Shown one piece after another: positions 20,643 through 64,000 of a stretch of DNA of 64,000 nt. The notes below the pieces were generated by a model, which saw only the letters and a list, made by a program, of their open reading frames with translations, did not search any database and was not told where the DNA came from. This DNA comes from Octopus sinensis (Eukaryota), in NCBI RefSeq assembly GCF_006345805.1, contig NC_043026.1:12131579-12195578 (forward strand). Reading direction: 5' to 3'. Both the position numbers and the translations under genes were made by a program. Within the stretch, counting starts at the first letter, position 1. Each line of letters starts with the position of its first letter.

Positions 20643-20663
20643 TTAATGAGAATGCAAAGTCAT
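20643..20663 (-). promoter_or_regulatory. uORF MTLHSH* in the G2 leader
   Basis: ATG ACT TTG CAT TCT CAT TAA, homologous in position to uORFs in G3, G5 and G6. Confidence 0.55.
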
Positions 20664-20839
20664 CTTACACAAGTTCCAGACTCTGAAACAGAGAAATTTT
20701 GCTAAACGTTGTCAGTGAGAGGAAATATTTCCCAGTGATTTTACCATAGATTTATATAAACCTGGTTCTCTTTGAGTTCTGCATAACATTTTCTTTTGAT
20801 CTTGATAAATGAGTGATAATCTTTAACGACAACAGCATC

Positions 20840-20870
20840 TGGTTTTCTGGAAATAACAAAAAAAGAGTAT
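20840..20870 (-). promoter_or_regulatory. Putative 3' splice acceptor of the G2 leader/coding exon (AG at 20848-20847)
   Basis: CTCTTTTTTTGTTATTTCCAG|AAAACCAGATG, matching G3 TTCTATTATTTCAG|AAAACCAGATG. Confidence 0.6.
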
Positions 20871-20945
20871 AAACATATGAAAAAAAAAGGAACTTGTCAA
20901 TGAACAAAGATAAAACAAATAGGAAAAATAAACCCAATCTGTTTC

Positions 20946-21798
20946 TTAACCCTTTCGTTACCGTATTCATTTTGAGATGCTCCGTGTTTCTTTGAATTAC
21001 TTTAAATATAACAAAGAATTTAGTAAAACAACTTAGTTATCATTAAGCTAGTGTTAGGAACATAAATTGTGACTAAAGTTTGGTGGAAGATTTTAATTCA
21101 AAACTTACGGAAACAAAACATTTGTACGCAGAGCCAGGGCCGGTTTCAGCCGGTTTGGTATTGAAAGGGTTAAAAACATCTCTACATTTGGGCAGATGGA
21201 CATTAGAAGCAGTTGAAAGGGTGGGGATTGAAAGAAATTTAGGCTATTATTTCTAGCATACAGAGTGACCACATAGAGGTCTCCTTCTCTCATGTCTTCT
21301 GCTGATTATTTTTCTTCTTAACCCTTTTGTTACCATACTTCTGTTGAGATGCTCTGTGTTTCTTTCAATTAATTTTAAATATAACAAAGAATTTAGTGAA
21401 ATATCTTAGTTATCATTCAGCTAGTGTTAGGAACATAGATTGTGACTAAGGTTTGGTGGAAGATTTTAATTCAAAATTTATGAAAACAAGACATTTGTAC
21501 TCAGAGCCAGAGGTGGTTTCAACCAGGTTGGTATCAAAAGGGTTAAGAATTGTTTCTCTATTATATATTTTAACCCTCTTGTTACCATAATTTTGTTGAG
21601 ATGCTCTGTGTTTCTTTCAAATAATTTTAAATATAAGAAAGAATTTAGTAAAATAACTTGGTTATCATTAAGCTAAAGTTAGGAACATAAATTGTGACTA
21701 AGGTTTGGTGGAAGATATAAATTCAAAACTTATGAAAACAAGACATTTGTACTCAGAACTAGAGCCAGTTTCAGCTGAGTTGGTAACGAGAGGGTTAA
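20946..21798. mobile_element. Three TTAA-flanked piggyBac-like MITEs (family P1)
   Basis: TTAA-CCC(T)TT...AAGGG-TTAA ends at 20946-21173, 21318-21546 and 21570-21798. Confidence 0.75.
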
Positions 21799-22174
21799 AC
21801 AAATATATAATATGTAATGTGTGCAACAGAGAGGAAAATTAAAACTGCATATATTGTGAACTTAGAATATGTGTTTATTAATAAAAGTTTAATAACGATA
21901 ATCTTTTATTCATACGAACGTAACTGATATGAAATATGTCATAAATACCAATTTTGAAGAATTTATTTATTCTTTTCTGTAATTCTGTAATTCAAAGACT
22001 AAGAATGTACTCTTAGATTGACTATGCCTAAAAACAGAATGGACAGTCATTGTTGGAATGTCTTTCATCATACTTATGTCTTAACAATACTGCTGCGGGT
22101 CTAAATGTTTTTTTAAAAAAATGACCATCCTATCTGTTTTTTTTAAATATTGTAGTTGTGACCATTCTGTATAC

Positions 22175-22405
22175 CTATTTCTTTATTACCCACAAGGGGC
22201 TAAACATAGAGGGGACAAACAAGGACAGACATAGGTATTAAGTCGATTACATCGACCCCAGTGCGTAACTGGTACTTAATTTATCGACCCCGAAAGGATG
22301 AAAGGCAAAGTCGACCTCGGCGGAATTTGAACTCAGAACGTAACGGCAGACGAAATACCGCTAAGCATTTCGTCCGGCGTGCTAACGTTTCTACCAGCTC
22401 GCCAC
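22175..22405 (-). mobile_element. SINE family B, single copy
   Basis: Full head and body. Confidence 0.85.
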
Positions 22406-22464
22406 CATTCTGTATACCAAATATGATCACCTCACTGCCTGAAAAATTTAAAACAATGGGACGT

Positions 22465-23300
22465 TAATGGCTAGAATACTTTAATCAGCTGAGTAGAGTT
22501 GAACCAGGGCTAGTTGAACAAGTGACAGGTGTATGTGTCTGTATGTCTGTCGACTTTGCCTTTCATCCTTTCGGGGTCGATAAATAAAGTACCAGATACG
22601 CACTGGGGTCGACGTAATCGACTTAATCCGTTTGTCTGTCCTTGTTTGTCCTCTCTGTGTTTAGCCCCTTGTGGGTAGTAAATAAATAGGTATGTCTGTC
22701 AACCAGCATGCTAAAAATAGCAGCTACATCCCTAACCCATTAAAGTATTCTATTATGGCTAGAATACTTTAATCAGCTGAGTAGAGTTGAACCAGGGCTA
22801 GTTGAACAAGTGACAGGTGTATGTGTCTGTATGTCTGTCGACTTTGCCTTTCATCCTTTCGGGGTCGATAAATAAAGTACCAGATACGCACTGGGGTCGA
22901 CGTAATCGACTTAATCCGTTTGTCTGTCCTTGTTTGTCCTCTCTGTGTTTAGCCCCTTGTGGGTAGTAAATAAATAGTATGTCTGTCAACCAGCATGCTA
23001 AAAATAGCAGCTACATCCCTAACCCATTAAAGTATTCTATTATGGCTGGAATACTTTAATCAGCTGAGTAGAGTTGAACCAGGGCTAGTTGAACAAGTGA
23101 CAGGTGTATGTGTCTGTATGTCTGTCGACTTTGCCTTTCATCCTTTCGGGGTCGATAAATAAAGTACCAGATACACACTGGGGTCGACGTAATCGACTTA
23201 ATCCGTTTGTCCTCTCTGTGTTTAGCCCCTTGTGGGTAGTAAATAAATAGGTATGTCTGTCAACCAGCATGCTAAAAATAGCAGCTACATCCCTAACCCT
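22465..23300. repeat. 288-bp tandem array x3 containing the SINE B 3' half
   Basis: ATGGCT.GAATACTTTAATCAGCTGAGTAGAG at 22467, 22755 and 23042. Confidence 0.9.
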
Positions 23301-23664
23301 TGGATAAATTTCTTTGTTAAAACCAATGAATATTGTTTGATTTAGGCACGAGACCAAAAAATTAAGACAGTTATGTTAGGGTTATATAGGCTGCTTAAAC
23401 CAGAATTCTGCTCTGTAATAATGTATAAAAGGGAAATTCTGAGTGCATGATTTACCAATTTTGAAGAATTTATTTATTCTTTTCTGTAATTCAAAGAGGT
23501 CGATTTTGCGCGTCGATCTAATTAGGATTGATGACCCGCTGATTATGGAAAAGGAAGCCATGGCAATCCAACTGATACATTTCTGCTTGAAAATAAGCTG
23601 AATCGTGAAATGTGAGAAAAGTTATTCTCTAATTTGTTGCTAATTTAGATCCATTTCCCCTTAT

Positions 23665-24412
23665 TTGGCAGACACCCATAAAATTATCAACCATCTTACT
23701 AACAATAACTCTGAGTACCTTTTCAAACTCCACCTGTCTAGCACTCGTGGACATATTTACAAAGTCAGAAAACAGCACAGCTCCCATGACTTTCGGAAAC
23801 ATTTTTTCACGCTGAGAGTTGCTGAAGCATGGAACAAACTGCCGGCATTAGTTGTTAGTTGTCGGAGCACTGCATCCTTCAAAACTTCCATGCTTTCTGA
23901 GATTTGCCAACACTACACCTGATTTTCTCCCCTCCATACACACGCAAGCATGTATCTGACTTATACACTGTTTACTTCCCAGACATTCGTACATTACTGC
24001 ATATGCAGACACCCATAAAATTATTAATCATCTTATTAACAATAACTCTGAGCACCTTTTCAAACTCCACCTGTCTAACACCCATGGACATGTTTACAAA
24101 GTCAGAAAACAACACAGCTCCCATGACTTTCGGAAACATTTTTTCACGCTGAGAGTTGCTGAAGCATGGAACAAACTGCCGGCATCAGTTGTTAGTTGTC
24201 GGAGCATTGCATCCTTCAAAACTTCCATGCTTCCTGAGATTCGCCAACACTACACCTGATTTTCTCCCCTCCATACACACACAAGCATGTACCTGACTCA
24301 TACATTGTTCGCTTTCCAGACATTTGTACATTACTGCATGTACTTTATATGCACTTTCTGACAAGTTGTGGTGCACCTGAGCACTGTATACAATAATTTC
24401 ATTATTATATTA
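23665..24412 (+). mobile_element. Head-to-tail dimer of CR1/L2 family 1 3' fragments
   Basis: Two consecutive copies joined at CATTACTGCATATGCAGACACCCAT (about 23990-24015). Confidence 0.85.
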
Positions 24413-25159
24413 TTCTGTAAAATAAGGAACGACCAATTAACGATGTATAATTAAACATTTAATTACGAAGGTGATGGAACACCGACCTTAGAACATGCAG
24501 GTCACCATATGCTATCCATAAACATTAACGTTTACCTTAATAATTAGATAATTATCACACATCGTATAATTAAATTTAATTACAATTATAGTATAAGCGG
24601 TGTCATGAATTAAAAGTCCCTAACGCAATTTAATACCGTACGTCCATGTCTCATTCACTGCGATCCTGTACTTCCTCTCTCTCCATCTTTAAACCGTTTC
24701 CTCCTAACATTTCTTATTTCACACCAATTCATTCCTCTACCTTTTATATTTATCGTACACAAGGTATACTCTATTTATATTCAACTTATATATTTTCTCT
24801 GTTTCGTTTTTCAGCAGTTAATTGTATTTCCTTTCACATGTTACCGTCGTTGCTAATTTTTATGTTGCTAGATGTGATTTTAAGTTGCGATTTCTAGCAA
24901 TTCGAACTCATTTTAATTAATATTTGTTTTGTTCCGAATATACAAATAAGTAACAAACTCGACTGTTAAATAATTGTTAATAACATCGAAAATATCCCTT
25001 ATGAAAAAAACAAGTAGGTTTACAGCACTATATAATAATCTTCCCGCGGCTGCTAAAACAATCTGATAGCAGTTTGGCAAAGTGAAAGTAACGTGTTGAA
25101 CAAAAATCACCGGTAGTTTTCGGGTCCTAGTGGGTTTTTTTGCGGAATTCTACTACATA

Positions 25160-25754: not shown

Positions 25755-26212
25755 CCTTACTTCCCTGGGCATGGACACTTTTAAACTCCGACATCTGGCA
25801 ACTGACTTGGCAGACACCCATAAAATTATCAACCATCTTAGAAACAATAACTCTGAGCACCTTTTCAAACTCCACCTGTCTAACACCCGTGGACATGTTT
25901 ACAAAGTCAGAAAACAACACAGCTCCCATGACTTTCGGAAACATTTTTTCACGCTGAGAGTTGCTGAAGCATGGAACAGACTGCTGGCATCAGTTGTTAG
26001 TTGTCGGAGCACTGCATCCTTCAAAACTTCCATACTTTCTGAGATTCGCCAATACTACACCTGATTTTCTCCCCTCCATACACACACAAGCATGTATCTG
26101 ACTCATACATTGTTCACTTTCCAGACATTTGTACATTACTGCATATACTTTATACGCACTTTCTGACAAGTTGTGGTGCACCTGAGCACTGTATACAATA
26201 ATTTCATTATCA
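25755..26212 (+). mobile_element. CR1/L2 family 1 3' fragment
   Basis: RLTSLGMDTFKLRHLATDL...RVAEAWN. Confidence 0.85.
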
Positions 26213-26384
26213 TTTTTATCACATTGGAGCCTGGTGCAGCCATCTGGTTCGCTAGCATGGAAAGCGGACGTTAAACGATGATGATAATGATGATGATGAT
26301 ACACTGACATAGAACCATTATATAAATATAGTAATATTTCTACAGTTGAATTTCTATTTTTTAAAGTATTTTCTATACCTTGTA

Positions 26385-26410
26385 CTGTTTTTCTATTATT
26401 TCAGAAAACC
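26385..26410 (+). promoter_or_regulatory. Putative splice acceptor of the G3 leader/coding exon (AG at 26403-26404)
   Basis: CTGTTTTTCTATTATTTCAG|AAAACC, homologous to the same site in G2, G4, G5 and G6. Confidence 0.6.
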
Positions 26411-26592
26411 AGATGTCAGTGGCATAAAGGAAATTTTTGCTTCAGATACTTCATCAATATTGCTCGTCTTTTAAAGACTAAAAGATGTTATACAAAATAA
26501 ATGTAAACCTGTTTATATAAATCTATAGTGAGTTGCTGTGAAATATTTCTTCTGAACTGAGATTAATAGCAGCATTTCTATACCTCACTGTC

Positions 26593-26818
26593 TTAAATCT
26601 TTAGCATTTAAACCAGCCAAAATATTCTATATCCAGCCAAAATATTTTATCTGTTTTATGTTGAAACTGGACAGATCTGGTCTCTCATACGAACCCTACA
26701 AAATTAACAGCTACCTCATCAAAATCTCATTGCCACAAGATAATGCAGGATTAATTCAAAACAATATGGATAAATAAGTATTAGTTTTGACAAAATAATG
26801 TGATGGCTAAATGGGTAA
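26593..26818. mobile_element. Degenerate piggyBac-like MITE (family P2) inside the G3 leader
   Basis: TTAAATCTTTAGCATTTAAACCAGCC...GCTAAATGGGTAA resembles 31409-31880. Confidence 0.55.
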
Positions 26819-26828
26819 TGTTTGTAAA

Positions 26829-26849
26829 ATGACTTTGTATTCAAAATAA
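26829..26849 (+). promoter_or_regulatory. uORF MTLYSK* in the G3 leader
   Basis: ATG ACT TTG TAT TCA AAA TAA. Confidence 0.55.
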
Positions 26850-27052
26850 ACTTGGAGGAATTTATTACAAAGAAGAATTTGCTGCATCTTGACAGTAATC
26901 ACTGTTGATGGAAACGTAGCCAAAGGAATATTTGTCAGAAATAAAATATAAACAGACGGAAAAAAAAGTCGATATTTTGTGACCAAAAAAAATGTTATAG
27001 AAAAATGAGTTGCTTGAACAGTTCAAGGAATTGACTTTTTTTATCTGAAACG

Positions 27053-28822
27053 ATGTCAAAAGAGATAGAAAAGCCATTGTACAATAGTGTTGTCTGTGAA
27101 GAATCATTCTTTAAGGGAAGTAGCTCGGTTGAGCATAAAGAGAAACCATATCATTGTGATATCTGTGGTAAATCATTCTCACGAAATTTTCATCTGACTG
27201 ATCACAGACGTATTCATACGGGAGAGAAACCATATCACTGTGATATCTGTGGTAAATTATTCACTCATAGAAAAAGCTTCACCGGACACAAACGTATTCA
27301 TACAGGGGAGAAACCATACCAGTGTGATATCTGTGGTAAATCATTCTCTGGAAGTAGTGACTTAACTAAACACATACGCAGTCATACAGGAGAGAGACCA
27401 TATCAGTGTGATATCTGTGGTAAAGCATTCTCTGAAAGTAGTGGTTTAACTATACACAAACGCACCCATACAGGAGAGAAACCATATCACTGTGATATTT
27501 GTGGAAAATCATTCTCTCGTAAAGTGCACTTAACTAAACACAAACGCACTCATACAGGAGAGAAACCATATTGTTGTGATATCTGTGGTAAATCATTCTC
27601 TGAAGGACGTACCCTAACAAATCACAAACGCACCCATACAGGAGAGAAACCGTATCATTGTGATATCTGTGGTAAATCATTCTCTCAAAATGACTTAACT
27701 AAACATAAACGTATTCATACAGGAGAAAAACCATATCACTGTGATATCTGTGGTAAATCATTCTCCGTAGCAAGTAGTTTAATTACTCACAAACGCATTC
27801 ATACTGGAGAGAAGCCATATCATTGTGATATCTGTGGAAAGTCATTCTCCCAAAGTTATGAATTAACTTCTCACAAACGTATTCATACAGGAGAGAAACC
27901 ATACCCCTGTGATATCTGTGGCAAACTTTTCTCTCATAGAAGTAACTTAATTACTCACAAGTACATTCATGCAGATGGGAAACCATATCACTGTGATATC
28001 TGTGGTAAATCATTCTCTCAAAATTTTCAATTGATACACCACAATCGCATTCATACTGGAGAAAAGCCATACCAGTGTGATATTTGTGGTAAATCCTTCT
28101 CTCAAAAAGGTAACCTTTGTACTCACAAGCGCATTCATACAGGTGAGAAACCATATCAGTGTGATATCTGTAGTAAATCATTCTCTCACAGAAATGCCCT
28201 AACTACACACAAACACATTCATACGGGAGAGAAACCATATCAGTGTGATATCTGTGGGAAATCATTCTCTCAAAATGGTGAGTTGATTAAACACAAATAT
28301 ATTCATACAGGAGAGAAGCCATATCATTGCGGTGACTGTAGCAAGTCATTCTCTCAAAATAGTGAATTAACTAAACACAGGCGCATTCATGCTGGAGAAA
28401 AACCATATTACTGTGATTTCTGTGGTAGTTTATTTTCTGGAAGTAGCGATTTAATCAAACACAAACGAATTCATACAGGGGAGGAACCATATCATTGTGA
28501 TATCTGTGGGAAATCATTCTCCAATAAAAAATCCTTAACTATACACAAACGAATTCATACAGGAGAGAAGCCACATCATTGCGATATCTGTGGGAAATCA
28601 TTCTCTGTGAAATGTAACTTGATTAAACACAAACGCATTCATACAGGAGAGAAACCATATCTCTGTGATATCTGTGGGAAGGCGTTCTCTCAAATAAATA
28701 CTTTAACTACACACAAACGTATTCATACGGGAGAGAAACCATATCACTGTGAAATTTGTGGGAATTTTTTCTCTTCAAGAAGTAATTTAAATTCACATGG
28801 ATGTACTCATACAGAAGAGTAA
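27053..28822 (+). CDS. C2H2 zinc-finger protein G3, 589 aa, 20 fingers
   Basis: 20 [11 protein letters not shown]-type fingers; finger 7 has a 1-aa deletion (QNDLTKH). Confidence 0.95.
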
Positions 28823-28877: not shown

Positions 28878-30618
28878 TTAACCCTTTCATTACCAACCTG
28901 GTTGAAACCACTTCTGGCTCTGAGTACAAATGTCTTGTTTCCATAAGTTTTAAATTAAAATCTTCCACCAAACCTTAGTCACAATTTATGTTCATAACAC
29001 TAGCTTAATGATAACTAAGTTATTTTACTAAATTCTTTGTTATATTTAAAATTAATTGAAAGAAACACAGAGCATCTCAACAGAAATACAGTAACGAAAG
29101 GGTTAAAATATATAATAGAGAAACAATTCTTAACCCTTTCGATACCAACCCGGCCAAAACCACCTCTGGCTCTGTAGTACAAATGTTTTGTTTCCATAAG
29201 TTTTGAATTAAAATTTTCCACCAAACCTTAGTCACAATTTATGTTCCTAACACTAGCTTAATGATAACTAAGTTATTTTACTAAATTCTTTGTTATATTT
29301 AAAGTAATTGAAAGAAACACAGAGCATCTCAACAGAAATATGGTAACAAGAGGGTTAAAATATATAATAGAGAAACAATTCTTAACCCTTTCGATACCAA
29401 CCTGGTTGAAACCACCTCTGGCTCTGTAGTAAAAATGTCTTGTTTTCATAAGTTTTGAATTAAAATCTTCCACCAAACCTTAGTCACAATTTATGTTCAT
29501 AACACTAGCTTAATGATAACTAAGATATTTTACTAAATTCTTTGTAATATTTAAAGCAATTAAAAGAAACAGAGAACATTTCAAAATAAATACAGTAACA
29601 AAAGGGTTAAAATATATAATAGAGAAACAATTCTTAACCCTTTCGATACCAACCCGGCCAAAACCACCTCTGGCTCTGTAGTACAAATGTTTTGTTTCCA
29701 TAAGTTTTGAATTAAAATTTTCCACCAAACCTTAGTCACAATTTATGTTCCTAACACTAGCTTAATGATAACTAAGTTATTTTACTAAATTCTTTGTTAT
29801 ATTTAAAGTAATTGAAAGAAACACAGAGCATCTCAACAGAAATATGGTAACAAGAGGGTTAAAATATATAATAGAGAAACAATTCTTAACCCTTTCGATA
29901 CCAACCTGGTTGAAACCACCTCTGGCTCTGTAGTAAAAATGTCTTGTTTTCATAAGTTTTGAATTAAAATCTTCCACCAAACCTTAGTCACAATTTATGT
30001 TCCTAACACTAGCTTAATGATAACTAAGATATTTTACTAAATTCTTTGTAATATTTAAAGCAATTAAAAGAAACAGAGAACATTTCAAAATAAATACAGT
30101 AACAAAAGGGTTAAAATATATAATAGAGAAACAATTCTTAACCCTTTCGATACCAACCCGGCCAAAACCACCTCTGGCTCTGTAGTACAAATGTTTTGTT
30201 TCCATAAGTTTTGAATTAAAATTTTCCACCAAACCTTAGTCACAATTTATGTTCCTAACACTAGCTTAATGATAACTAAGTTATTTTACTAAATTCTTTG
30301 TTATATTTAAAGTAATTGAAAGAAACACAGAGCATCTCAACAGAAATATGGTAACAAGAGGGTTAAAATATATAATAGAGAAACAATTCTTAACCCTTTC
30401 GATACCAACCTGGTTGAAACCACCTCTGGCTCTGTAGTAAAAATGTCTTGTTTTCATAAGTTTTGAATTAAAATCTTCCACCAAACCTTAGTCACAATTT
30501 ATGTTCCTAACACTAGCTTAATGATAACTAAGATATTTTACTAAATTCTTTGTAATATTTAAAGCAATTAAAAGAAACAGAGAACATTTCAAAATAAATA
30601 CAGTAACAAAAGGGTTAA
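28878..30618. repeat. Tandem array of 7 piggyBac-like MITEs (family P1), 252-bp period with a 504-bp higher-order repeat
   Basis: TIRs start at 28882, 29134, 29386, 29638, 29890, 30142 and 30394; two variants alternate. Confidence 0.92.
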
Positions 30619-36839: not shown

Positions 36840-38468
36840 TCATTGTTCCGTATGGGTAGCAACGTGTTCACTCAATTGACGTTTTTGAGAAAATGATTCA
36901 CCACAGATATCACAGCGATACGGTTTCCCTCTTGTATGTGTGCGCTTATGTTTAGTTAAGTAGACACGTCCAGAAAAGGATTTACCGCAGATTTCACAGT
37001 GATATGGTTTTTCTCCAGTATGAATACGTTTGTGAGTGACTAAGTTATGTTTCTGAGAGAAGGATTTACCACAGACATCACAGTGATATGGTTTCTCTCC
37101 TGTGTGAATGCGTTTGTGTTGAGTTAAGTAACTACTTTCTGAGAACGATTTACCACAGGTGTTACAGTGATATGGCTTCTCACCTGTGTGAATGTGTTTG
37201 TGAGTAGTTAGAGTATGTTTATAAGAAAACGATTTACCACAGGCATCACAATGATACGGTTTGTCTCCTGTATGAAGATGTTTGTGAATAGTTAAGGAAT
37301 ATCTATGCGAGAATGAATTACCACAGATATCACAGTGATATGGTTTCTCTCCTGTATGAATACGTTGGTGAGTAATTAAGCTATATTTTTGAGAGAATGA
37401 TTTAGCACAAATATCACAGTGATACAGCTTCAGTCCTGTATGAATGCGTTTGTGTCTAGTCAAGTGAGCAGCATCTGAGAACAATTTATCACAGATATCA
37501 CAGCGATATGGCTTTTCTCCCGTATGAATACGTTTGTGAGTAGTTAAGACAGGTCCATGGGAAAACGATTTGCCACAGATGTCACAGTGATATGGCTTCT
37601 CTCCTGTGTGAGTGTATTTGTGTACAGTTAAAGTATGGCCATGAGAAAAGGATTTACCACAGATATTACACTGATATGGTTTCTCTCCTGCATGAATACG
37701 TTTATGTCTACCTAAGTCACTACTTTGAGAGAACGATTTACCACAGACATCACAGTGAAAGGGTTTCTCACCTGTATGAATGCGCTTGTGTTTAGTGAAA
37801 CGTCTTCCATCAGAGAATGATTTATCACAGATATCACACTGATATGGCTTCTTTACTGTATGGATACGCTTATGTTTGGTTAAGGAGCTATTCTCAGAGA
37901 ATGATTTACTACAGACGTCACAGAAATATGGCTTTTCACCTGTGTGAATGCGTATGTGTGTAGTCAGGTGAACGCTCTGAGAAAATGATTTATCACAGAC
38001 ATCACAGCGATATGGTTTTTCTCCTGTATGAATGCGTTGGTGAGTGATTAGGTTACCTTTCAGAGAGAAGGACTTACCACAGACATCACAGCAATATGGT
38101 TTCTCACCTGTATGTATACGTCTATGTTTATACAGGCTGCTATTTTGAGAGAATGATTTACCACAGGTATTGCAATGGTATGGCTTCTCTCCTGTATGGA
38201 TGTGCTTGTGTTTAGTTAAATGATTTGCCTCAGAGAATGATTTACCACAGACATCACAGCAATACACCTTTTCTCCTGTATGAATACATTTATGTTTAGT
38301 CAGGCTGGTACTGTGAGTGAATGATTTACCACAGACATCACACTGATACGGTGCTTTCCCTTTCTCATTTTTTTCATCATCAATAAAATCAATACTTTTA
38401 GAGTCTGTTTCATATTTAACCTTCTTCTCAATTTCCATAATTTTTTTTTTTATCATCACCATATACAA
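36840..38468 (-). CDS. C2H2 zinc-finger protein G4, 542 aa, 18 fingers
   Basis: 18 fingers after N-terminus [28 protein letters not shown]; the start may be the later Met of MEIE. Confidence 0.95.
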
Positions 38469-38575
38469 ATGATTCGGTTTATTTCATTCCTAGCAAATAT
38501 TTCTACTTCCACATTTCCACCAAATGTAACATTTGATACCTGAAGCCACAAACCCCATTGTAAACTCATTCAAGT

Positions 38576-38596
38576 TTAATAAGTATGTGAAATCAG
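38576..38596 (-). promoter_or_regulatory. uORF homologue in the G4 leader with CTG in place of ATG
   Basis: CTG ATT TCA CAT ACT TAT TAA. Confidence 0.4.
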
Positions 38597-38726
38597 TTTG
38601 TATCTGATTTATACAATGAGAAATTGGAATTAGATGGCAAAAATTGGTGCAAAGCTTTATACGCACTTTTGACAAGTTGTGGTGCACCTGAGCACTGTAT
38701 ACAATAATTTCATTGTTATTTTTAAA

Positions 38727-39130
38727 AGAATTTTGTGAGTGGCTGTGTGGTAAGTAGCTTGCTAACCAGCCACATGGTTCCGGGTTCAGTCCCACTGCGT
38801 GGAATCTTGGGCAAGTGTCTTCTGCTATAGCCCCGGGCCGACCAATGCCTTGTGAGTGGATTTGGTAGACGGAAACTGAAAGAAGCCTGTCGTATATATG
38901 TATATATATATATATAAGTGTGTGTGTATATGTTTGTGTGTCTAGCATTGCTTGACAACCGATGCTGGTGTGTTTACGTCCCCGTTACTTAGCGGTTCGG
39001 CAAAAGAGACCGATAGAATAAGTACTGGGCTTACAAAGAATAAGTCCCAGGGTCGATTTGCTCGACTAAAGGCGGTGCTCCAGCATGACCGCAGTCAAAT
39101 AACTGAAACAAGTAAAAGAGTAAAAGAGTA
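38727..39130 (+). mobile_element. SINE family A inside the G4 leader (antisense to G4)
   Basis: Matches family A. Confidence 0.88.
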
Positions 39131-39318
39131 TAGAATATGGGGGTGGTTTCCATCCGAGTAAAATAGGAATTCAAGTGGTCCATAGGTAAAACAAAAACGA
39201 TTGAAAAACACTGGTCCAGAATAAACTCAAATGCTGAATACTTATGACAGTTCCATATAAATATTTATCTGTAGAATTATATCTGTTCTATATAATACTT
39301 TTGTTTAGCCTTGAAATC

Positions 39319-39460
39319 ATCATCATCATCGTTTAACGTCCGTTTTCCGTGCTAGCATGGGTTGGACGGTTCGACTGGGGTCTGGGAAGCCAGGAGGTTG
39401 CACCGGGCTCCAGTCTGATCTGGCAGTGTTTCTACAGCTGGATGCCCTTCCTAACGCCAA
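39319..39460 (-). mobile_element. Family C 3' fragment inside the G4 leader
   Basis: CATCATCATCGTTTAACGTCCG...GGATGCCCTTCCTAACGCCAA. Confidence 0.75.
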
Positions 39461-39504
39461 TGATGATAAATATTGATGATGTATGTTGATATAAACAACT
39501 CTAT

Positions 39505-39540
39505 ATTGTTCTGGTATTCTGAAATATAAAGGAAACAAGA
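39505..39540 (-). promoter_or_regulatory. Putative splice acceptor of the G4 leader exon (AG at 39520-39519)
   Basis: CTTGTTTCCTTTATATTTCAG|AATACCAG. Confidence 0.55.
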
Positions 39541-39658
39541 ATGAGTATATTTATAATATAGAGATGCAAAAATCGAAATTTTACATTTCAAAAGGAAAAA
39601 AAATCTTTACTGTAATAATTGTACTTATGCAATATTTCTTTCCGTTTTAAAAATGTAT

Positions 39659-50117: not shown

Positions 50118-51200
50118 CTATTGTGTACGAATGCATTTGTGAGTGGTCAACCTGTAGCCACGTGAATATGATTTACCACAGATATGACAATGGTATAGTT
50201 TCTTTCCTGTATGAATGAGCTTGTGTTGACTGTAAGCGCTCCCGTCAGAAAATGATTTACCACAGACATCACAGTGATATGGCTTTTCTCCTGTATGAAC
50301 ACGGTGGTGAGTAATTAGGTGACCGTTCTGAGAGAAGGATTTACCACAGATATCACAAGGATACGGTTTCTCTCCTGTATGAGTGCGTTTGTGCCTATTT
50401 AAGTCACATTTTCCAGAGAATGATTTGTCGCAGACGTCACAGTGATAGGGTTTCTCTCCCGTATGAATACGTATGTGCTTGGTTAAGTGAATGCTTTGAG
50501 AAAAGGATTTATCACAAATGTCACAACGATATGGTTTTTCTTCTGAGTGAATGAGTTTGTGAGTAGTCATGTGTGCATTTTGGGAGAAACATTTACCACA
50601 GATGTCACAGTGATACGGTTTTTCTCCCGTATGAATAGACTTGTGTGTAGTTAAGCTCCACTTCTGGGAGAAAGATTTACCACAGACATCACATTGATAT
50701 GGTTTTTCTCCTGAATGTATAGACTTATGTGTAGCCAAGCTCCATTTCTGGGTGAATGATTTCCCACAGATATCACAGTGATATGGCTTTTCTCCTGTAT
50801 GAATAGACTTATGTTTAGTCAGGCTCCAGTTTTGACAGAACGATTTACCACAGACGTCGCAATTATATGGTTTCTCTTCCATATGAATGTGTTTGTGAGT
50901 AGCTAAGGAATTTGCACGGGAGAATAATTTACCACAAATGTTACAGCGATGTGCTTTGTCTTCTGTGTGAATGCGTTTGTGTCTAGTCAAAGAACCAGCC
51001 TCACGGAACGATTTACCACAGATATCACAGTGATACGGTTTCTCCCCTGTATGAATGCGTTTGTGAGTAGTCAGGGCGTATGTACAGGTGAACGATTTAC
51101 CACATAAATCACAGTAATGTGGCTTTATATTATCAGGAAAATCAACGATTTTAGAGTCCGTTTCACATTTAACAATGTTCTCACTAAACTCAATTTCCAT
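50118..51200 (-). CDS. C2H2 zinc-finger protein G5, 360 aa, 11 complete fingers plus 1 lacking the last His
   Basis: Finger array after MEIEFSENIVKCETDSKIVDFPDN. Confidence 0.92.
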   Translation of the reverse strand: MEIEFSENIVKCETDSKIVDFPDNIKPHYCDLCGKSFTCTYALTTHKRIHTGEKPYHCDICGKSFREAGSLTRHKRIHTEDKAHRCNICGKLFSRANSLATHKHIHMEEKPYNCDVCGKSFCQNWSLTKHKSIHTGEKPYHCDICGKSFTQKWSLATHKSIHSGEKPYQCDVCGKSFSQKWSLTTHKSIHTGEKPYHCDICGKCFSQNAHMTTHKLIHSEEKPYRCDICDKSFSQSIHLTKHIRIHTGEKPYHCDVCDKSFSGKCDLNRHKRTHTGEKPYPCDICGKSFSQNGHLITHHRVHTGEKPYHCDVCGKSFSDGSAYSQHKLIHTGKKLYHCHICGKSYSRGYRLTTHKCIRTQ

Positions 51201-51345
51201 AATTCTTCTTTCCTTTCTATCATATACACCCGTTGCTCTTTGTGTTTTTATATTTTATTCCTAATAAATATTACTTCTGCTATATTTCCATCAAATATTA
51301 TGATATCTGAAGATGCTGCAAATTTCTTTGTAAATTCTTCCAAGT

Positions 51346-51366
51346 TTAATAACCATGTAGAATCAT
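51346..51366 (-). promoter_or_regulatory. uORF MILHGY* in the G5 leader
   Basis: ATG ATT CTA CAT GGT TAT TAA. Confidence 0.55.
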
Positions 51367-51594
51367 CTTACATAGTGGGAAAGTGAAAGTAGAATGCAAG
51401 AACAGTGGGCAAAGAATCAAAGCAGTGAAGTAAACAAAAGTTGGTGTGACATAACAGTTCCAGAGAAATATTTATCTGTAGTTTAGCTTTGCTTTATATA
51501 AACAGTATTGTATCTGTTCTGTGTAATATTTCCTTTTAGACTTGAAAAGACGACATCTATTGATGATGTATATTGAAATAGATGTTTCTTCGTT

Positions 51595-51635
51595 GTTTCT
51601 GATATTCTGAAATAATAGAGAAACAAGAATGTAAG
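51595..51635 (-). promoter_or_regulatory. Putative splice acceptor of the G5 leader exon (AG at 51608-51607)
   Basis: TTCTTGTTTCTCTATTATTTCAG|AATATCAG. Confidence 0.6.
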
Positions 51636-53502: not shown

Positions 53503-54913
53503 CCGTAAATCCTTGAGTATAGTCCGCCCTTTAGGTCGACTTTGCCTTTCATTCTTTTGGTGTCGATTAAATAAGTATGCACTGGGGTCGATATAATCGA
53601 CTTAATCCGTTTGTCTGTCCTTGTTTGTCCCCCCTGTGTTTAGCCCCTTATGGGTAGTAAAGAAATAGGTATGTGTTTGTGTATGCATGGGTCGATATAA
53701 TCGACTTAATCCGTTTGTCTGTCCTTGTTTGTCCCCTCTGTGTTTAGCCCCTTGTGGGTAGTAAAGAAATAGGTATGTGTTTGTGTATGCATGGGTCGAT
53801 ATAATCGACTTAATCCGTTTGTCTGTCCTTGTTTGTCCCCTCTGTGTTTAGCCCCTTATGGGTAGTAAAGAAATAGGTGTGTGTTTGTGTATGCATGGGT
53901 CGATATAATCGACTTAATCCGTTTGTCTGTCCTTGTTTGTCCCCTCTGTGTTTAGCCCCTTGTGGGTAGTAAAGAAATAGGTATGTGTTTGTGTATGCAT
54001 GGGTCGATATAATCGACTTAATCCGTTTGTCTGTCCTTGTTTGTCCCCTCTGTGTTTAGCCCCTTATGGGTAGTAAAGAAATAGGTATGGTTTGTGTATG
54101 CATGGGTCGATATAATCGACTTAATCCGTTGTCTGTCCTTGTTTGTCCTCTCTGTGTTTGTCCCTTGTGGGTAGTAAAGAAATAGGTATGTGTTTGTGTA
54201 TGCATGGGTCGATATAATCGACTTAATCCGTTTGTCTGTCCTTGTTTGTCCCCTTTATGTTTAGCCCCTTGTGGGTAGTAAAGAAATAGGTATGTGTTTG
54301 TGTATGCATGGGTCGATATAATCGACTTAATCCGTTTGTCTGTCCTTGTTTGTCCCCTTTATGTTTAGCCCCTTGTGGGTAGTAAAGAAATATATAATTC
54401 ACTCGCATTAGGCATATAGAACGTCAGATGACTTTTATGTTATGCGGGGGATTTTTAAAGGGCTGTACCTCTGAAAAACCTAAACCTTGTGTGTAATATG
54501 CACCCCTTCTCTAACTTGAGTCAAGGAGGTCTATATAACGTCCTTGGTTTGTAAAACTATACAGTAACGTCCTTTATTATTATTGTATATATAACATAAT
54601 GCAAACGTGTAGCTTTTTTGTGCATTTTGTTTGCAGAAAATAAAGAAATAACAGTAATAACGTTTAATAAATGTTGCTTACTGCAAGTTATGGTTGATTC
54701 TTTTATGACTTCATTGCTTTCAGGCTTAGCTTAAGGTATTTTCCCGCCCGACATCACAAAATGTGTCTGAATAAACATTGCCGGACAGCAAATAGAGACT
54801 CGGACATTGCTTAGAAAATAATTTTAATTTTTAACCTCGTATGTAGTACGCACTAGGGATTTCGACCTTTAAATTTTGGGAAAAAAATGCGGATTATACT
54901 CGAGGATTTATGG
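53503..54913. mobile_element. TA-flanked Tc1/mariner-superfamily non-autonomous element carrying a 104-bp satellite
   Basis: TA|CCGTAAATCCTTGAGTATAGTCCGC on the left and GCGGATTATACTCGAGGATTTATGG|TA on the right. Confidence 0.7.
53586..54392. repeat. 104-bp satellite x8 derived from the SINE B 3' end
   Basis: GGGTCGATATAATCGAC at 53586, 53689, 53793, 53897, 54001, 54104, 54206 and 54310. Confidence 0.92.
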
Positions 54914-59823: not shown

Positions 59824-59825
59824 TG
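59525..59825. repeat. (TA)n/(TATG)n microsatellite
   Basis: Read directly. Confidence 0.97.
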
Positions 59826-59941: not shown

Positions 59942-60213
59942 TAATTTATATATAGAGGGCATAATTATACATACATGCCAGGAGGCATTATATATACATG
60001 CCAAACGCTAAGAGGGACAATCAGTCATTTCTACCAAAAATATTACTAATCCCACCGAATGCAATTTTTCAAAGTACTTACTTTGAAAAATTGCATTCGG
60101 TGGGATTAGTAATATTTTTGGTAGAAATGACTGATTGTCCCTCTTAGCGTTTGGCATGTATATATAATGCCTCCTGGCATGTATGTATAATTATGCCCTC
60201 TATATATAAATTA
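59942..60213. repeat. Perfect palindrome with 135-bp arms and a 2-nt loop
   Basis: 59942-60076 is the exact reverse complement of 60079-60213 by eye; centre CAAAGTA-CT-TACTTTG. Confidence 0.92.
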
Positions 60214-60239
60214 TATATATATATGTATATATATTATAG

Positions 60240-60281
<42 letters not shown>

Positions 60282-60487
60282 GTATATATATATATGTATA
60301 TGTATATATGTATATGTATATGTATATATATATGTATATATATATATATGTATATATGTATATATATATGTATATATATATGTATATGTATATATATATA
60401 TGTTATATATATGTAATATATATATATATATATGTAATATATTATATATAATGTTAATATATATATATGTATATATAATATATATAT

Positions 60488-60520
<33 letters not shown>

Positions 60521-60555
60521 GTATGAGAAGGAAAATATATTATATAATATATATA
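60214..60555. repeat. (TA)n/(TATG)n microsatellite
   Basis: Read directly. Confidence 0.97.
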
Positions 60556-60611
60556 AGAAATATTGAATTTCTAAATCTCTCGTAGAGACATGTACGGTGG
60601 TGGGGCGATAA

Positions 60612-61051
60612 AATGGTTGTATACTGTCAATCTAACAAGAACGTGACAGTAGGCGGTACCACCGCTGTATAGCCCTAGGAAGCATCGAACGCCTCCTGAT
60701 GGCTTTGACACATTTTTCCCTGTGTCCTTATATACATATACGATTATTTTGATAATCAGTGAATAGACTTCACTGAGTATAGATATATACAATTACGAAG
60801 TCGAGACAAATATCACCGGTTGACCGGTGTCTGCTACTCTAGGCCGATGAAGGACAACGATCCTGAAACACGTGTCCCTAGATGCAGTTTCGGCAGCCGG
60901 AGGTGTTTGTCTCCCCTTCGTATATGTATATAAGAACACAGGGAAAAATGTGTCAAAGCCATCAGGAGGCGTTCGATGCTTCCTAGGGCTATACAGCGGT
61001 GGTGTACCCCCTACTGTCACGTTCTTGTTAGATTGACAGTATACAACCATT
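60612..61051 (+). mobile_element. Penelope-like terminal repeat with an inverted duplication (arms 60612-60743 / 60918-61051)
   Basis: About 132-bp inverted arms; the loop contains a hammerhead motif. Confidence 0.7.
60831..60887 (+). ncRNA. Minimal type I hammerhead ribozyme (U4C core variant), predicted cleavage after 60876
   Basis: CTGC..TCTAGG-CCGATGA-AGGA(CAACGA)TCCT-GAAA-C(ACGT)G-TC-CCTAGA.GCAG: all three stems pair, and stem III is capped by a palindromic tetraloop. Confidence 0.75.
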
Positions 61052-61075
61052 CTATATATATATATATATATATAT

Positions 61076-61372
61076 CATCATCATCATCATCGTCGTTTAA
61101 CGTCCGTTCTCCATGCTAGCATGGGTTGGACGGTTCGACCGGGTTTCTGGGAAGCCAGAAGGCTGCACCAGGCTCCAGTCTAATTTGGCAATGTTTCTAC
61201 AGCTGGATGCCCTTCCTAACGCCAACCACTCCGTGAGTGTAGTGGTGCTTTTTACGCCACCTGCACAGGTGCCAGGCGGGGCTGGCAACGGCCACGGTCA
61301 GATTGGTGTATTTTATGTGCCACCGGCACGGAAGCCAGTCGAGGCGGTGCTGGCATCGGCCACGAGTCGGAT
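61076..61372 (-). mobile_element. Family C retroelement
   Basis: (CAT)n tail and family C body. Confidence 0.75.
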
Positions 61373-62056
61373 AAGTAATATATATATATATATGAAGTAA
61401 AATTACTTCTCATCTGATGATTACGGTCTTTTATAATGGAATAATGTTCTCATTCTTCTATTACAAGTTACCTAAGAAACAGCTGTAATGGCAGGGGTGG
61501 ACAGCTTGACAGGAGCTGGCAAGGCACCTGTCAAGTCGCCAGGTTCCATAGTCCGTTTTAGCTTGGTTTCTACAGTTGGATGCCCTTCATAACACCAACT
61601 ACTTTTCAGAATGTACTGGGTGCTTTTTACGAGGCCCCATCATCAGTGCTTTTTATGTGGAACCATCACAAGTGCTTTTTTCATGGTACCATCACCAGTA
61701 GTTTTTATGTGGCACCATCATCAATTCTTTTTAAATTAAATCCTTCCTTCATATTCTTTTTAATTGAGAATTTTCCTGTTTAATTATATTCAAAACACTA
61801 AAACAGAAGTTAGTATACTTGAGGGCATAAATGATACAAATATTAAGTTAGGGTACTTGTAATGGATATTCATAAAATTTCTAGACTATTCCAATGAGGC
61901 ATTACCATTGGTGATAAAACTATTGGTTACACCAATGAAAAGTAAAACAGAGACAATTTATTCAGCAAAAAGTAGGGTCATAATAGGATCAAGAAAAAGT
62001 AGAGTTATACATGCAGTGCTTGTTAAACTGTACATAGTTTCTATATTTCAATATAG

Positions 62057-63412
62057 TTACTGTTCTGTATGAGTAGAAGCGTGTTCACTCAAGTCCCGCT
62101 TTTGAGAAAATGATTCACCACAGATATCACAGCGATACGGTTTTCCTCTTGTATGAGTGCGCTTATGTTTAGTTAAGTAAATACGCCCAGAAAAAGATTT
62201 ACTGCAGATTTCACAGTGATATGGTTTTTCTCCAGTATGAATACGTTTGTGAGTGACTAAGTTATGTTTTTGAGAGAAGGATTTACCACAGACATCACAG
62301 TGATATCGTTTCTCTCCTGTATGAATTCGTTTGTGTTTAGTTAAGTAACTACTTTCTGAGAATGATTTACCACAGGTATTACAGTGATATGGCTTCTCAC
62401 CTGTGTGAATGTGTTTGTGAGTAGCTAAAGTATGCCCATAAGAAAACGATTTACCACAGGCATCACAATGATATGGTTTCTCTCCTGTATGAAGATGTTT
62501 GTGAATAGTTAAGGAATATCTATGCGAGAATGAATTACCACAGATATCACAGTGATATGGTTTCTCTCCTGTATGAATACGTTGGTGAGTAATTAAGTTA
62601 TCTTTTTGAGAGAATGATTTATCACAGATATCACAGTGGTATAACTTCAGCCCTGTATGAATGCGTTTGTGTCTAGTCAAGTGAGCAGCATCTGAGAACA
62701 ATTTATCACAGATATCACAGCGATATGGCTTCTCTCCCGTATGAATACGTTTGTGAGTAGTTAAGACACGTCCAAGGGAAAATGATTTACCACAGATGTC
62801 GCAGTGATATGGTCTCTCTCCTGTATGAATATGATTATGGCTCATTAGGGTATATCTACGAGAGAATGATTTACCACAGATATCACAGTGATATTGTTTC
62901 TCTCCTGTATGAATGTGCTTGTGTTTAGTGAAACGCATTCCATCAGAGAATGATTTATTGCAGATATCACATTGATATGGTTTCTTTACTGTGTGAGTAC
63001 GTTTATGTCTAGTTAAGGTACCATTCTCGGAGAATGATTTACCACAGACGTCGCAGAAATACGGCTTTTCCCCTGTGTGAATGCGTATGTGTTTTGTTAA
63101 ATGAACACTTTGAGAGAATGATTTTCCACAGACATCACAGTGATACGGCCTCTCTCCTGTATGAATACGCTGGTGAGTTATTAGGTTGCCTTTCAGAGAG
63201 AAGGATTTATCACAGATATCACACTGATATGGTTTCTCTCCTGTATGAATACATTTATGATTGGCTAAGCTGCTGTTTCGAGAGAATGATGTGCCACAGA
63301 TATCACAATCGTATGAGGTTTTCCCTTTCTCATTCTTCTCATCATCAGGAAAATCAATCCTTTTGGTCTCTGTCTCACATTTAACCTTGATCTCACTTAA
63401 TTCCTTTTCCAT
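62057..63412 (-). CDS. C2H2 zinc-finger protein G6, 451 aa, 15 fingers, close paralogue of G4
   Basis: Shares the G4 finger order and odd linkers (TVKKP, TGLKL, TRGKP) and the THTEQ end. Confidence 0.95.
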
Positions 63413-64000
63413 AATTTTCCTTTTCTTACCACGATATACAAGTTTCCTTCTTTTAAAATTTTATATTTTATTCCTAATAAATATTACAACTATATTTCCA
63501 TCAAGTGTAATCAGAAAATGCTGCAAATTTCTTTGTAAATTCTTCCAAGTTCAATAACCATGTAAAATCATCTTACACATCAATTTCCATAATTCTTCTT
63601 TCCTTTCTACCATATACACCCGTTACTCTTTGTGTTTTTATATTTAATTCCTAATAATTATTACTAATAATAACTATTTCCATGAAATATTATGATATCT
63701 GAAGATGCTGCAAATTTCTTTGTAAATTCTTCCAAGTTTAATAACCATGTAGACTCATCTTACACAGTGGGAAAGTGAAAGTAGAATGCAAGATCAGTGG
63801 GCAAAGAATGAGAGGAGTGAAGTAAACAAAAGTTGGTATGACATAACAGTTGCAGAGAAAGATTTATCTATAGTTCAGCTTTGCTTTATATAAACAGTAT
63901 TGTATCTGTTCTGTGTAATATTTCCATTTAGACTTGAAAAGATGACATCTATTGATGATGTATATTGATATAGATGTTTCTTTGTGGTTTCTGATATTCT
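63413..64000 (-). promoter_or_regulatory. G6 5' leader made of two tandem leader modules with three uORFs
   Basis: uORFs MSLHGY* (63738-63758), MEIDV* (63573-63590) and MILHGY* (63551-63571); 63581-64000 closely matches G5 51191-51608; acceptor AG at the window edge. Confidence 0.7.

What the first reader, a model, noticed from the sequence alone, without database searches (positions are those of the whole stretch)
20643..63758. Positionally conserved 6-codon uORF and splice acceptor in the leaders of G2-G6
Seen: ATG plus 5 codons plus stop at the homologous leader position in G2 (MTLHSH*), G3 (MTLYSK*), G5 (MILHGY*) and G6 twice (MILHGY*, MSLHGY*), and with CTG in G4 (LISHTY*). Start, length and stop are kept (TAA or TGA) while G3 and G5 share only 6 of the 15 internal bases. 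All five leaders begin at a homologous acceptor (TATTTC(C)AG|AA). An overlapping frame also gives a similar peptide, DF(T/V/A)(W/F/Y)xLNLEEF, which could instead be a decayed ancestral coding segment. Inference: a cluster-wide translational control element that has survived TE insertions into the leaders.
Basis: partly seen in the sequence, partly recalled or inferred. Interest (0 to 1): 0.7.

Follow-up and report, generated by a model that had tools for sequence, protein, structure and literature searches.

The report
Inherited short ORF in octopus zinc-finger leaders
The six-codon upstream reading frames are really there, but they look like one of many chance short ORFs carried along in a duplicated non-coding leader of octopus zinc-finger genes; the leader's splice acceptor is well conserved and the short ORF is not.

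Summary
The window is a tandem C2H2 zinc-finger (ZNF) gene cluster from an Octopus species. It is about 95% identical and collinear to O. vulgaris chromosome OX597841.1. All the listed ATG + 5 codons + stop frames exist at the stated coordinates, and there is an unlisted orphan copy at 16224-16244.

They lie in a 0.4-0.65 kb non-coding module that was duplicated together with the ZNF exon. Comparison with 15 further copies of the module from O. vulgaris and O. sinensis gave these results:
- The ATG is kept in 4 of 7 lineages that have the segment. That is no better than the average base or triplet of the module.
- The six-codon length is kept only in the window cluster and its orthologues.
- Intact paralogues lack the whole segment.
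- The stop is part of a block that is conserved whether or not it is in frame.
- Each leader has 7-15 upstream ATGs, the number expected from base composition.
- In the G3 orthologue pair, one of the five substitutions in the core falls inside the short ORF.

The splice acceptor holds up. A pyrimidine tract plus CAG|A is present in every copy, it sits in a 390-nt block with one substitution between species, and two annotated gene models are consistent with its use.

No transcripts could be obtained, so exon or intron status is unresolved. Verdict: ordinary, low interest.

The parts
20643..20663 (-). G2 short ORF, ATG + 5 codons + TAA (MTLHSH*). A TE insertion starts 8 nt after the stop.
   Evidence: Identical in the O. 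vulgaris orthologue, which also gained an in-frame ATG 9 nt upstream.
16224..16244 (-). Orphan copy of the G2 short ORF, in a leader fragment with no downstream ZNF exon.
26829..26849 (+). G3 short ORF (MTLYSK*).
   Evidence: One A>G difference from the O. vulgaris orthologue at 26843.
38576..38596 (-). G4 homologous segment with CTG in place of ATG. The preceding GTAAG is also lost (ACAAAC).
51346..51366 (-). G5 short ORF (MILHGY*). It is preceded by ATG-TAA 7 nt upstream.
63551..63580 (-). G6 proximal short ORF (MILHGY*, TGA stop). An in-frame ATG at 63580 makes it 9 codons (MCKMILHGY*).
63738..63758 (-). G6 distal short ORF (MSLHGY*), in a tandemly duplicated leader segment (63581-63794).
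51607..51631 (-). G5 pyrimidine tract + CAG: putative 3' splice site. The exon starts at 51606 (AATATCAGAAAC).
26380..26404 (+). G3 pyrimidine tract + CAG. The exon starts at 26405. It lies at the centre of a 390-nt block with 1 substitution against O. vulgaris.
20847..20871 (-). G2 pyrimidine tract + CCAG. The exon starts at 20846.
39519..39543 (-). G4 pyrimidine tract + CAG. The exon starts at 39518. A tRNA-derived SINE-like repeat lies between it and the short-ORF segment.
63999..64000 (-). G6 acceptor AG. The rest of the tract lies beyond the end of the window.
51201..51606 (-). G5 leader module, from the acceptor to the main ATG: 406 nt, 30% GC, 7 upstream ATGs against 7.0 expected.
26405..27052 (+). 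G3 leader module: 648 nt, 14 upstream ATGs against 12.3 expected. It contains a ~190-nt insert shared with the L003/L007 paralogues. The ancestral start has mutated (ATA), and a new ATG is used at 27053.
19922..20846 (-). G2 leader module, interrupted by a TE/SINE at about 20011-20634.
38439..39518 (-). G4 leader module (1080 nt including the SINE).
63413..63998 (-). G6 leader module, with a partial tandem duplication. The junction reads ATGGAAATTGA|TGTGTAAG near 63580/63581.
51280..51291 (-). A second positionally shared mini-ORF, ATG GAA ATA TAG. The G3 counterpart is at 26908-26919 (+).
51493..51502 (-). Conserved TATA-like block, TTTATATAAA. Counterparts: G2 20751-20760, orphan 16332-16341, G3 26512-26521, G4 39486-39495, G6 63885-63894.
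50118..51200 (-). G5 C2H2-ZNF coding exon (360 aa). The others are G2 17659-19921 (broken), G3 27053-28822, G4 36840-38438 and G6 62057-63412.

Best explanation
The 21-nt frames are short ORFs inherited inside a non-coding 5' module of about 0.4-0.65 kb. This module has been copied together with the zinc-finger exon during tandem duplication of one Octopus-specific C2H2-ZNF subfamily.

The module begins at a 3' splice site (pyrimidine tract + CAG|A). That site is its best conserved part, and upstream or read-through transcripts are joined to it (inferred). The rest of the module is AT-rich and carries 7-15 upstream ATGs, as many as base composition predicts.

The six-codon ORF is one of these. 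It looks positionally conserved because the window copies are recent relatives, and because it sits between two slowly evolving sequence blocks. Its start, length and stop are not themselves under detectable selection.

If the module is a continuous exon, all these upstream ATGs together would lower translation of the ZNF ORF in a generic way, through upstream initiation followed by leaky scanning or re-initiation. This step is inferred, not shown.
For: **Identity of the locus.**
- The window holds ZNF ORFs.
- It is 94-96% identical and collinear to O. vulgaris OX597841.1.

**Extent of the module.**
- It is alignable from the acceptor to the main ATG in the window copies, in 3 O. vulgaris orthologues (G2, the orphan and G3, in L001) and in 12 paralogous copies in O. 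vulgaris and O. sinensis.

**State of the short-ORF site in eight lineages.**
- ATG present in G2, G3, G5/6 and L003/7. In L003/7 the ORF is only ATG AAT AAT TAA.
- CTG in G4, AGA in L004, AAA in L005.
- Segment deleted in L006, whose genes are intact (579 aa).
- ATG column conservation is 0.76 against a module mean of 0.766. 37% of triplets are shared at least as widely.

**Background expectations.**
- Upstream ATG counts match composition: G5 7 against 7.0, G3 14 against 12.3, L004 8 against 9.2.
- G5 and G3 share 2 of the 7 G5 upstream ATGs, against 2.2 expected.
- The stop lies in the block TTAAACTTGGA.GAATTTAC. This block is conserved even where no ATG is in frame with it (L004), and 13 of the 18 columns after the stop are invariant in the window.

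**Orthologue divergence for G3.**
- Flanks: 3.9-8%.
- The 390 nt around the acceptor: 1 substitution.
- Core from the short ORF to the main ATG: 5 of 260, with one of the five inside the short ORF.

**Acceptor.**
- Conservation.
- An O. sinensis gene range ends at a TAG 21 nt after the acceptor of the next gene, in phase 0. That matches the gene's known phase-0 donor AAG|GTTCGT. In-frame stops 70 nt upstream force the terminal exon to start in that short stretch.
- An O. vulgaris model behaves in the same way at L004.
Against: - No transcript, CAGE or ribosome-profiling data could be reached, so neither the transcription start, the exon limits nor translation of any upstream ORF is shown.
- Within the window clade, the start and stop are better kept than the 15 interior bases (4 of 6 against 5 of 15 invariant columns). 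That is what a sequence-independent regulatory uORF would also give.
- Seven of eight lineages have some ATG within 12 nt of the site, so weak selection for 'a short uORF about here' is not excluded.
- Only about 20 copies in 8 lineages were sampled, out of a family of hundreds.
- The O. vulgaris annotation may be partly ab initio.
- The lower divergence of AT-rich sequence relative to CpG-bearing repeats may inflate the apparent constraint on the acceptor block.
Confidence: 0.7

Rival explanations
1. One reading: in the G2/G3/G5/G6 lineage the six-codon uORF is a selected, peptide-independent translational brake on the ZNF ORF. Ribosomes initiate at it, terminate, and only some re-initiate downstream.
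For: - Start, length and stop are kept in 6 of 7 window copies and in 3 O. vulgaris orthologues, while the interior varies.
- The ATG has a purine at -3 (AAGATGA).
- An ATG at the same site is also present in L003/L007.
Against: - The ATG is conserved only at the module average.
- Its length changes to 3, 9 or 11 codons in L003/7, G6p and oG2, and L005.
- It is lost in G4, whose CDS is intact, and in L004 and L005. It is deleted in the intact L006 genes.
- It is intact in an orphan fragment and in the probably decaying G2.
- One of the five core substitutions between species lies inside it.
- Six to fourteen other upstream ATGs share the leader, at chance density.
Confidence: 0.13
2. The short ORF is not in the mature mRNA. 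Its ATG overlaps a 5' splice site (TGT|GTAAGATGA). A conserved AATATTTRYYAG|GAAT about 110 nt downstream would be the matching acceptor, making the segment a mini-intron. Alternatively, most of the module is removed by some other splice.
For: - GTAAG or GTAAA precedes the ATG in G2, G3, G5 and both G6 copies.
- YAG|(G/A)AAT is present in all window copies.
- The TE insertions in G2 and L005 lie between these two sites.
- Upstream ATGs are not depleted, as expected for sequence that is not scanned.
Against: - The GT is not kept in G4 (AC), L004 or L005 (GC).
- The AG is not kept in L004 or L006 (TTGG).
- The putative acceptor has a poor pyrimidine tract compared with the upstream one.
- No junction evidence is available.
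Confidence: 0.12
3. The module is mainly a promoter. The conserved TTTATATAAA block would be a TATA box, with transcription starting about 30 nt downstream. The upstream CAG would then be used only by read-through transcripts from the neighbouring gene. The short ORF would still lie in the 5' UTR.
For: - The TATA-like block and a GAAATATTTC block about 30 nt downstream are conserved in most lineages.
- There are 0 substitutions in the first 190 nt of the G3 module between species.
Against: - The L006 genes lack the TATA-like block but keep the acceptor and the 3' 140 nt.
- TATA-like strings are common in 30% GC sequence.
- No data on transcription start sites are available.
Confidence: 0.2
4. 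The overlapping frame (DF.W.LNLEEF) is the remnant of an ancestral coding exon, such as an N-terminal effector domain of the ZNF proteins.
For: Similar peptides can be read in all window copies.
Against: - The frame ends at different places in each copy.
- It is shifted between G3 and G5 by indels of 3 and 2 nt.
- There is no credible Pfam match: three peptides gave none, and the 84-aa G4 segment gave only a below-cutoff CwfJ_C_1 hit outside the motif (E=0.009, 16 bits against a cutoff of 21).
- The only two hits among 1.84 billion representative proteins are unrelated repetitive sequences without zinc fingers.
Confidence: 0.03

Closest known systems
Ordinary upstream ORFs in animal 5' leaders (regulatory examples: yeast GCN4, mammalian ATF4; from general knowledge)
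   Same: A short ATG-to-stop frame upstream of the main ORF, with a purine at -3. If transcribed and scanned it would capture ribosomes.
   Different: - No evidence of selective conservation, of ribosome occupancy or of regulated re-initiation.
- It is one of 7-15 upstream ATGs, at chance density.
- Its length and presence vary among paralogues.
Conserved-peptide uORFs (CPuORFs; from general knowledge)
   Same: Positionally shared among homologous leaders.
   Different: The peptide is not conserved (MTLHSH, MTLYSK, MILHGY, MNN), so this class is excluded.
5' UTR exons and promoter modules duplicated together with the zinc-finger exon in tandem ZNF clusters, as in vertebrate KRAB-ZNF clusters (from general knowledge)
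   Same: A non-coding 5' module with its splice site is duplicated along with the ZNF-array exon and homogenised by unequal recombination. Examples here are the G6 partial duplication and the L003b fusion.
   Different: This is an Octopus-specific subfamily without KRAB, SCAN or another known effector domain. The module is AT-rich and repeatedly invaded by SINEs and other TEs.
Octopus lineage-specific C2H2-ZNF expansion (Albertin et al. 2015, PMC4795812, as cited in PMC10547256)
   Same: Tandem arrays of multi-finger C2H2 genes on an octopus chromosome.

Membership tests
Upstream ORF acting as a translational control element | ATG and in-frame stop upstream of the main ORF, on the same strand | tested here: met
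   G4 has CTG instead.
Upstream ORF acting as a translational control element | Lies in the mature mRNA 5' UTR | not testable with these tools
   No octopus transcripts were reachable. Exact protein look-ups failed, and the homologue searches returned only genome-derived loci.
Upstream ORF acting as a translational control element | Start and stop conserved above neighbouring bases across homologues | tested here: not met
   - ATG columns 0.76 against a module mean of 0.766; 37% of triplets do as well.
- ATG present in 4 of the 7 lineages that have the segment.
- 13 of 18 columns after the stop are invariant, against 4 of 6 start and stop columns.
Upstream ORF acting as a translational control element | Ribosome occupancy, or an effect on main-ORF output | not testable with these tools
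   Needs ribosome profiling or reporter assays.
Conserved-peptide uORF | Amino-acid sequence conserved, with mostly synonymous substitutions | tested here: not met
   The peptides differ at most positions. G3 and G5 share 6 of 15 interior bases.
3' splice site (acceptor) of a 5' leader exon | Pyrimidine tract followed by YAG at a homologous position | tested here: met
   84% pyrimidine in -23 to -4, and CAG|A, in all 10 copies measured, covering all eight lineages.
3' splice site (acceptor) of a 5' leader exon | Evolutionary constraint | tested here: met
   G3 -200 to +190 around the site: 1 substitution in 390 nt, against 3.9-8% in the flanks.
3' splice site (acceptor) of a 5' leader exon | Spliced junction observed in RNA | tested here: inconclusive
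   Indirect only. An O. sinensis gene range ends at the first phase-0 stop after the acceptor, and an O. vulgaris model does likewise.
Octopus tandem C2H2-ZNF cluster | Multiple adjacent ORFs of C2H2 fingers with HTGEKPY linkers, orthologous to an octopus chromosome | tested here: met
Protein-coding exon (alternative frame) | Open frame preserved among copies, with homology to known proteins | tested here: not met

The most novel reading that the evidence does not exclude
What selection maintains is not this exact ORF but a uORF-laden leader with at least one short ORF near this site. This would combine with a shared, ultra-conserved leader acceptor that lets transcripts from one ZNF gene splice into the next. 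Transcription and translation of a whole octopus-specific ZNF subfamily would then be damped and coupled in cis.
Probability: 0.1. Interest if true: 0.5.

Novelty: new member of a known kind. Interest (0 to 1): 0.15.

Why it matters
The evidence points instead to the usual outcome of tandem duplication: recent paralogues share leader sequence, including chance short ORFs.

What remains useful:
- A defined 5' module and a strongly conserved splice acceptor, which can help annotate 5' ends and read-through isoforms of octopus ZNF genes.
- A caution that conservation among paralogues in a single window is not evidence of selection.

Tried and rejected
1. **Full-length ZNF protein search.** It was swamped by vertebrate ZNFs and gave no octopus hit. 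The tool appears to return proteins of about the query's length, so one search was wasted.
2. **Exact look-ups of ten window ORF variants.** None is in the collection, so no transcripts or same-species contigs could be fetched.
3. **Searching for an upstream exon 1 by comparing intergenic regions.** Only SINEs and satellites were shared, so exon 1 was not located.
4. **Mini-intron idea (GTAAG...YAG).** Considered and kept only as a minor rival, because the GT and AG are not conserved in distant paralogues.
5. **My first alignment of L003/L007.** It placed the site wrongly. A three-way alignment showed that the ATG is kept there, with a 3-codon ORF. This softened an earlier 'not conserved anywhere' reading.
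6. **Rfam scan of the window.** No family matched.
7. **Pfam and 1.84-billion-protein searches of the alternative-frame peptide.** No credible match: one below-cutoff Pfam hit outside the motif and two unrelated library hits.
8. **Loci L002, L008, L009 and L010.** They contain no copy of the module.
9. **Literature search.** Nothing was found on octopus ZNF leaders.

Full report
**What the window is.** The window holds six tandem C2H2 zinc-finger (ZNF) genes. Each has one long finger-array ORF. The genome around them is 38% GC and rich in repeats. Searches with the short N-terminal part of the proteins returned only Octopus proteins as specific hits. One of these led to O. vulgaris chromosome OX597841.1 at 3.796-3.820 Mb (locus L001). 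L001 is collinear with window 6085-34550 at 94-96% identity. The window therefore comes from an Octopus species close to O. vulgaris but distinct from it. None of its ORFs is in the protein collection.

**The observation.**
The count of 6 shared bases out of 15 between G3 and G5 is also right.
- There is one more copy, identical to G2's, at 16244-16224. It sits in an orphan leader fragment with no ZNF exon behind it.
- The proximal G6 copy has an in-frame ATG 9 nt upstream, so its ORF has 9 codons, not 6.
- The acceptor motif is present for G2, G3, G4 and G5 (exon starts 20846, 26405, 39518 and 51606). For G6 it is cut by the end of the window.

**What the frames sit in.** The region from the acceptor to the main ATG is one alignable module. 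It is 406 nt in G5 and longer where TEs have inserted. Its conserved blocks are, in order:
- a pyrimidine tract + CAG|A(A/G/T)(A/T)AYCAGA;
- a TTTATATAAA block;
- GAAATATTTC;
- GTAAGATGA;
- TTAAACTTGGA.GAATTTAC;
- TTTGCAGCATCTTCAGATAT;
- TTGATGGAAAT;
- AATATTTGTT.GGAATAAA;
- the context of the main ATG.

An HMM of the core found 15 further copies:
- the O. vulgaris orthologues of G2, the orphan and G3 (in L001);
- paralogues on three other O. vulgaris chromosomes (L003 three copies, L004 one, L006 three, L007 two);
- paralogues in O. sinensis (L005, two copies).

ZNF clusters L002 and L010 have no such module. It therefore belongs to a subfamily, not to octopus ZNFs in general.

**Is the short ORF conserved as such?** Eight lineages can be compared.

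| Lineage | State at the homologous site |
|---|---|
| G2 (and orthologue) | ATG, 6 codons; the orthologue has an added in-frame ATG upstream |
| G3 (and orthologue) | ATG, 6 codons |
| G5/G6 | ATG, 6 codons (9 in proximal G6) |
| L003/L007 | ATG kept, but the ORF is ATG AAT AAT TAA after a ~9-nt deletion |
| G4 | CTG |
| L004 | AGA; a different ATG 9 nt upstream gives 4 codons |
| L005 | AAA; an upstream ATG gives 11 codons ending at the same TAA |
| L006 | the middle ~300 nt of the module, including this segment, is absent, although an intact 579-aa gene follows |

- The three ATG columns have a mean majority fraction of 0.76, against 0.766 for the module as a whole.
- 37% of all triplets in the module are shared by at least as many lineages.
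- The TAA belongs to a block (TTAAAC.TGGA) that is present even where it is out of frame with the site, as in L004.
- In the window copies, the 18 nt after the stop are as invariant as the start and stop columns themselves (13 of 18 against 4 of 6).

**Chance expectation.**
- The leaders are about 30% GC and contain as many upstream ATGs as composition predicts: G5 7 against 7.0, G3 14 against 12.3, L004 8 against 9.2, L003b 15 against 12.2. Nearly all of these open ORFs of 1-40 codons.
- G5 and G3 leaders are 66% identical, with 31% identical triplets. About 2.2 of the seven G5 upstream ATGs should be shared by descent alone, and two are.
The other is ATG GAA AT. TAG (G5 51291, G3 26908).

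**Orthologue test.**

| Region (window against O. vulgaris) | Divergence |
|---|---|
| G3 flanking sequence | 3.9-8% |
| G3 CDS | 1.47% (third codon positions 3.7%) |
| G3, 390 nt centred on the acceptor | 1 substitution |
| G3 core, short ORF to main ATG | 5 of 260 (1.9%), one inside the short ORF |
| G2 module | 3.8%, with the short ORF unchanged |

G2 is probably decaying. Its frame is broken, its finger array is 90% homogeneous, and its CDS has diverged by 3.0%. An unchanged 21 nt there is unremarkable, because about 0.4 is expected by chance. The constrained element is therefore the acceptor-proximal block, not the short-ORF region. One caveat applies: AT-rich sequence may mutate more slowly than the CpG-bearing repeats in the flanks.

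**The acceptor.**
- In the 10 copies measured, which cover all eight lineages, the 20 nt before the CAG are 84% pyrimidine, against 51% for the window as a whole. Substitutions there mostly keep pyrimidines.
- In O. sinensis, the gene of P0134 has a first coding exon ending at a phase-0 donor, AAG|GTTCGT. The recorded range of that gene ends at a TAG exactly 21 nt after the acceptor of the next gene's leader, in phase 0. In-frame stops 70 nt upstream mean the terminal coding exon must begin within that short stretch.
- An O. vulgaris model ends 22 nt after the L004 acceptor in the same way.
- This is indirect evidence, and the O. vulgaris models may be partly ab initio. It is nevertheless consistent with real use of the site, at least by read-through transcripts.

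**What remains open.**
- No transcripts could be reached, so the transcription start, the 3' limit of the leader exon, and whether the short ORF is in the mature mRNA are all unknown.
- A possible mini-intron (GT|GTAAGATGA ... YAG|GAAT) fits the window copies. Its GT and AG are not kept in G4, L004, L005 or L006.
- The TATA-like block could mark an internal promoter, but the L006 genes lack it.
- The alternative-frame peptide has no support as a coding remnant.

**Verdict.** The short ORFs are real. They are best explained as one of many chance ORFs inherited in a duplicated, recombining leader module. The splice acceptor is the part of the finding that stands. If the leader is scanned as a whole, its many upstream ATGs would damp ZNF translation generically. 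This is inferred and not specific to this ORF. Novelty and interest are low.

Noticed in passing
window 16216-16440 (-): An orphan leader fragment (TATA-like block through the short ORF, then the same TE as in G2) with no ZNF exon downstream. It differs from its O. vulgaris counterpart at only 3 of 225 sites, while the adjacent sequence is 9% diverged.
   Followed up: partly
window 63404-63794 (-): G6's leader carries a partial tandem duplication running from TGTGTAAG to the first 11 nt of the CDS (ATGGAAATTGA). This creates an extra MEIDV* mini-ORF. The distal copy is nearly identical to G5's leader, whereas the G6 CDS is closest to G4, which points to mosaic or unequal recombination.
   Followed up: partly
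window 17659-19921 (-): The G2 finger array (84-nt period, 21.7 copies) is 90% self-identical, against 67-76% in the other genes, and the ORF is split in two. This looks like recent intragenic amplification in a probably decaying gene. The O. vulgaris annotation has only a 140-aa model there.
   Followed up: partly
window 26205-26594 (+): A 390-nt non-coding block centred on the G3 leader acceptor has 1 substitution against O. vulgaris. It is more conserved than the third codon positions of the gene (3.7%).
   Followed up: partly
L003 9263 downstream (-), O. vulgaris OX597842.1: An ORF reads from three fingers straight into a second copy of the leader's 3' part and N-terminus (...SGKSFVKSNIREEGKPLCTVTREMKIMENELRR...). 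This is a fusion of two neighbouring ZNF units, with its junction at the AATATTTGTTAAG block.
   Followed up: no
L003 10001-10839 (+) and 1358-2196 (+): The annotated 94-aa protein P0121 starts on the opposite strand, inside the first bases of the leader, and reads the pyrimidine tract as KRKRNN before joining a divergently oriented ZNF fragment. This could reflect a bidirectional promoter or be an annotation artefact.
   Followed up: no
L006 (O. vulgaris OX597834.1), three copies: A short form of the leader (171 nt) keeps the acceptor, about 30 nt after it, and the last ~140 nt, but lacks the TATA-like block and the short-ORF segment. A good donor (CCAAG|GTAAAAG) lies about 135 nt upstream of the acceptor and could mark an exon 1.
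   Followed up: no
window 27004-27053 (+) and L004 6285-6335: In G3 and L004 the ancestral start ATGGAAA is mutated (ATAGAAA, ATTGAAA), and the ORF begins at a new ATG about 50 nt downstream (MSKE..., MSEE...).
   Followed up: no
window 6085-8462 (-), 9221-9840, 53575-54392, 28878-30618: Reverse-transcriptase (LINE-like) ORF fragments, a 620-nt ATT microsatellite, and several satellite arrays (104-, 176-184- and 252-nt periods) built from SINE-like units fill the intergenic space.
   Followed up: no
Homologous-protein tool behaviour: All hits had lengths close to the query length (400-630 aa for a 360-aa query, under 100 aa for 56-aa queries). Full-length octopus paralogues were therefore never returned.
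   Followed up: no
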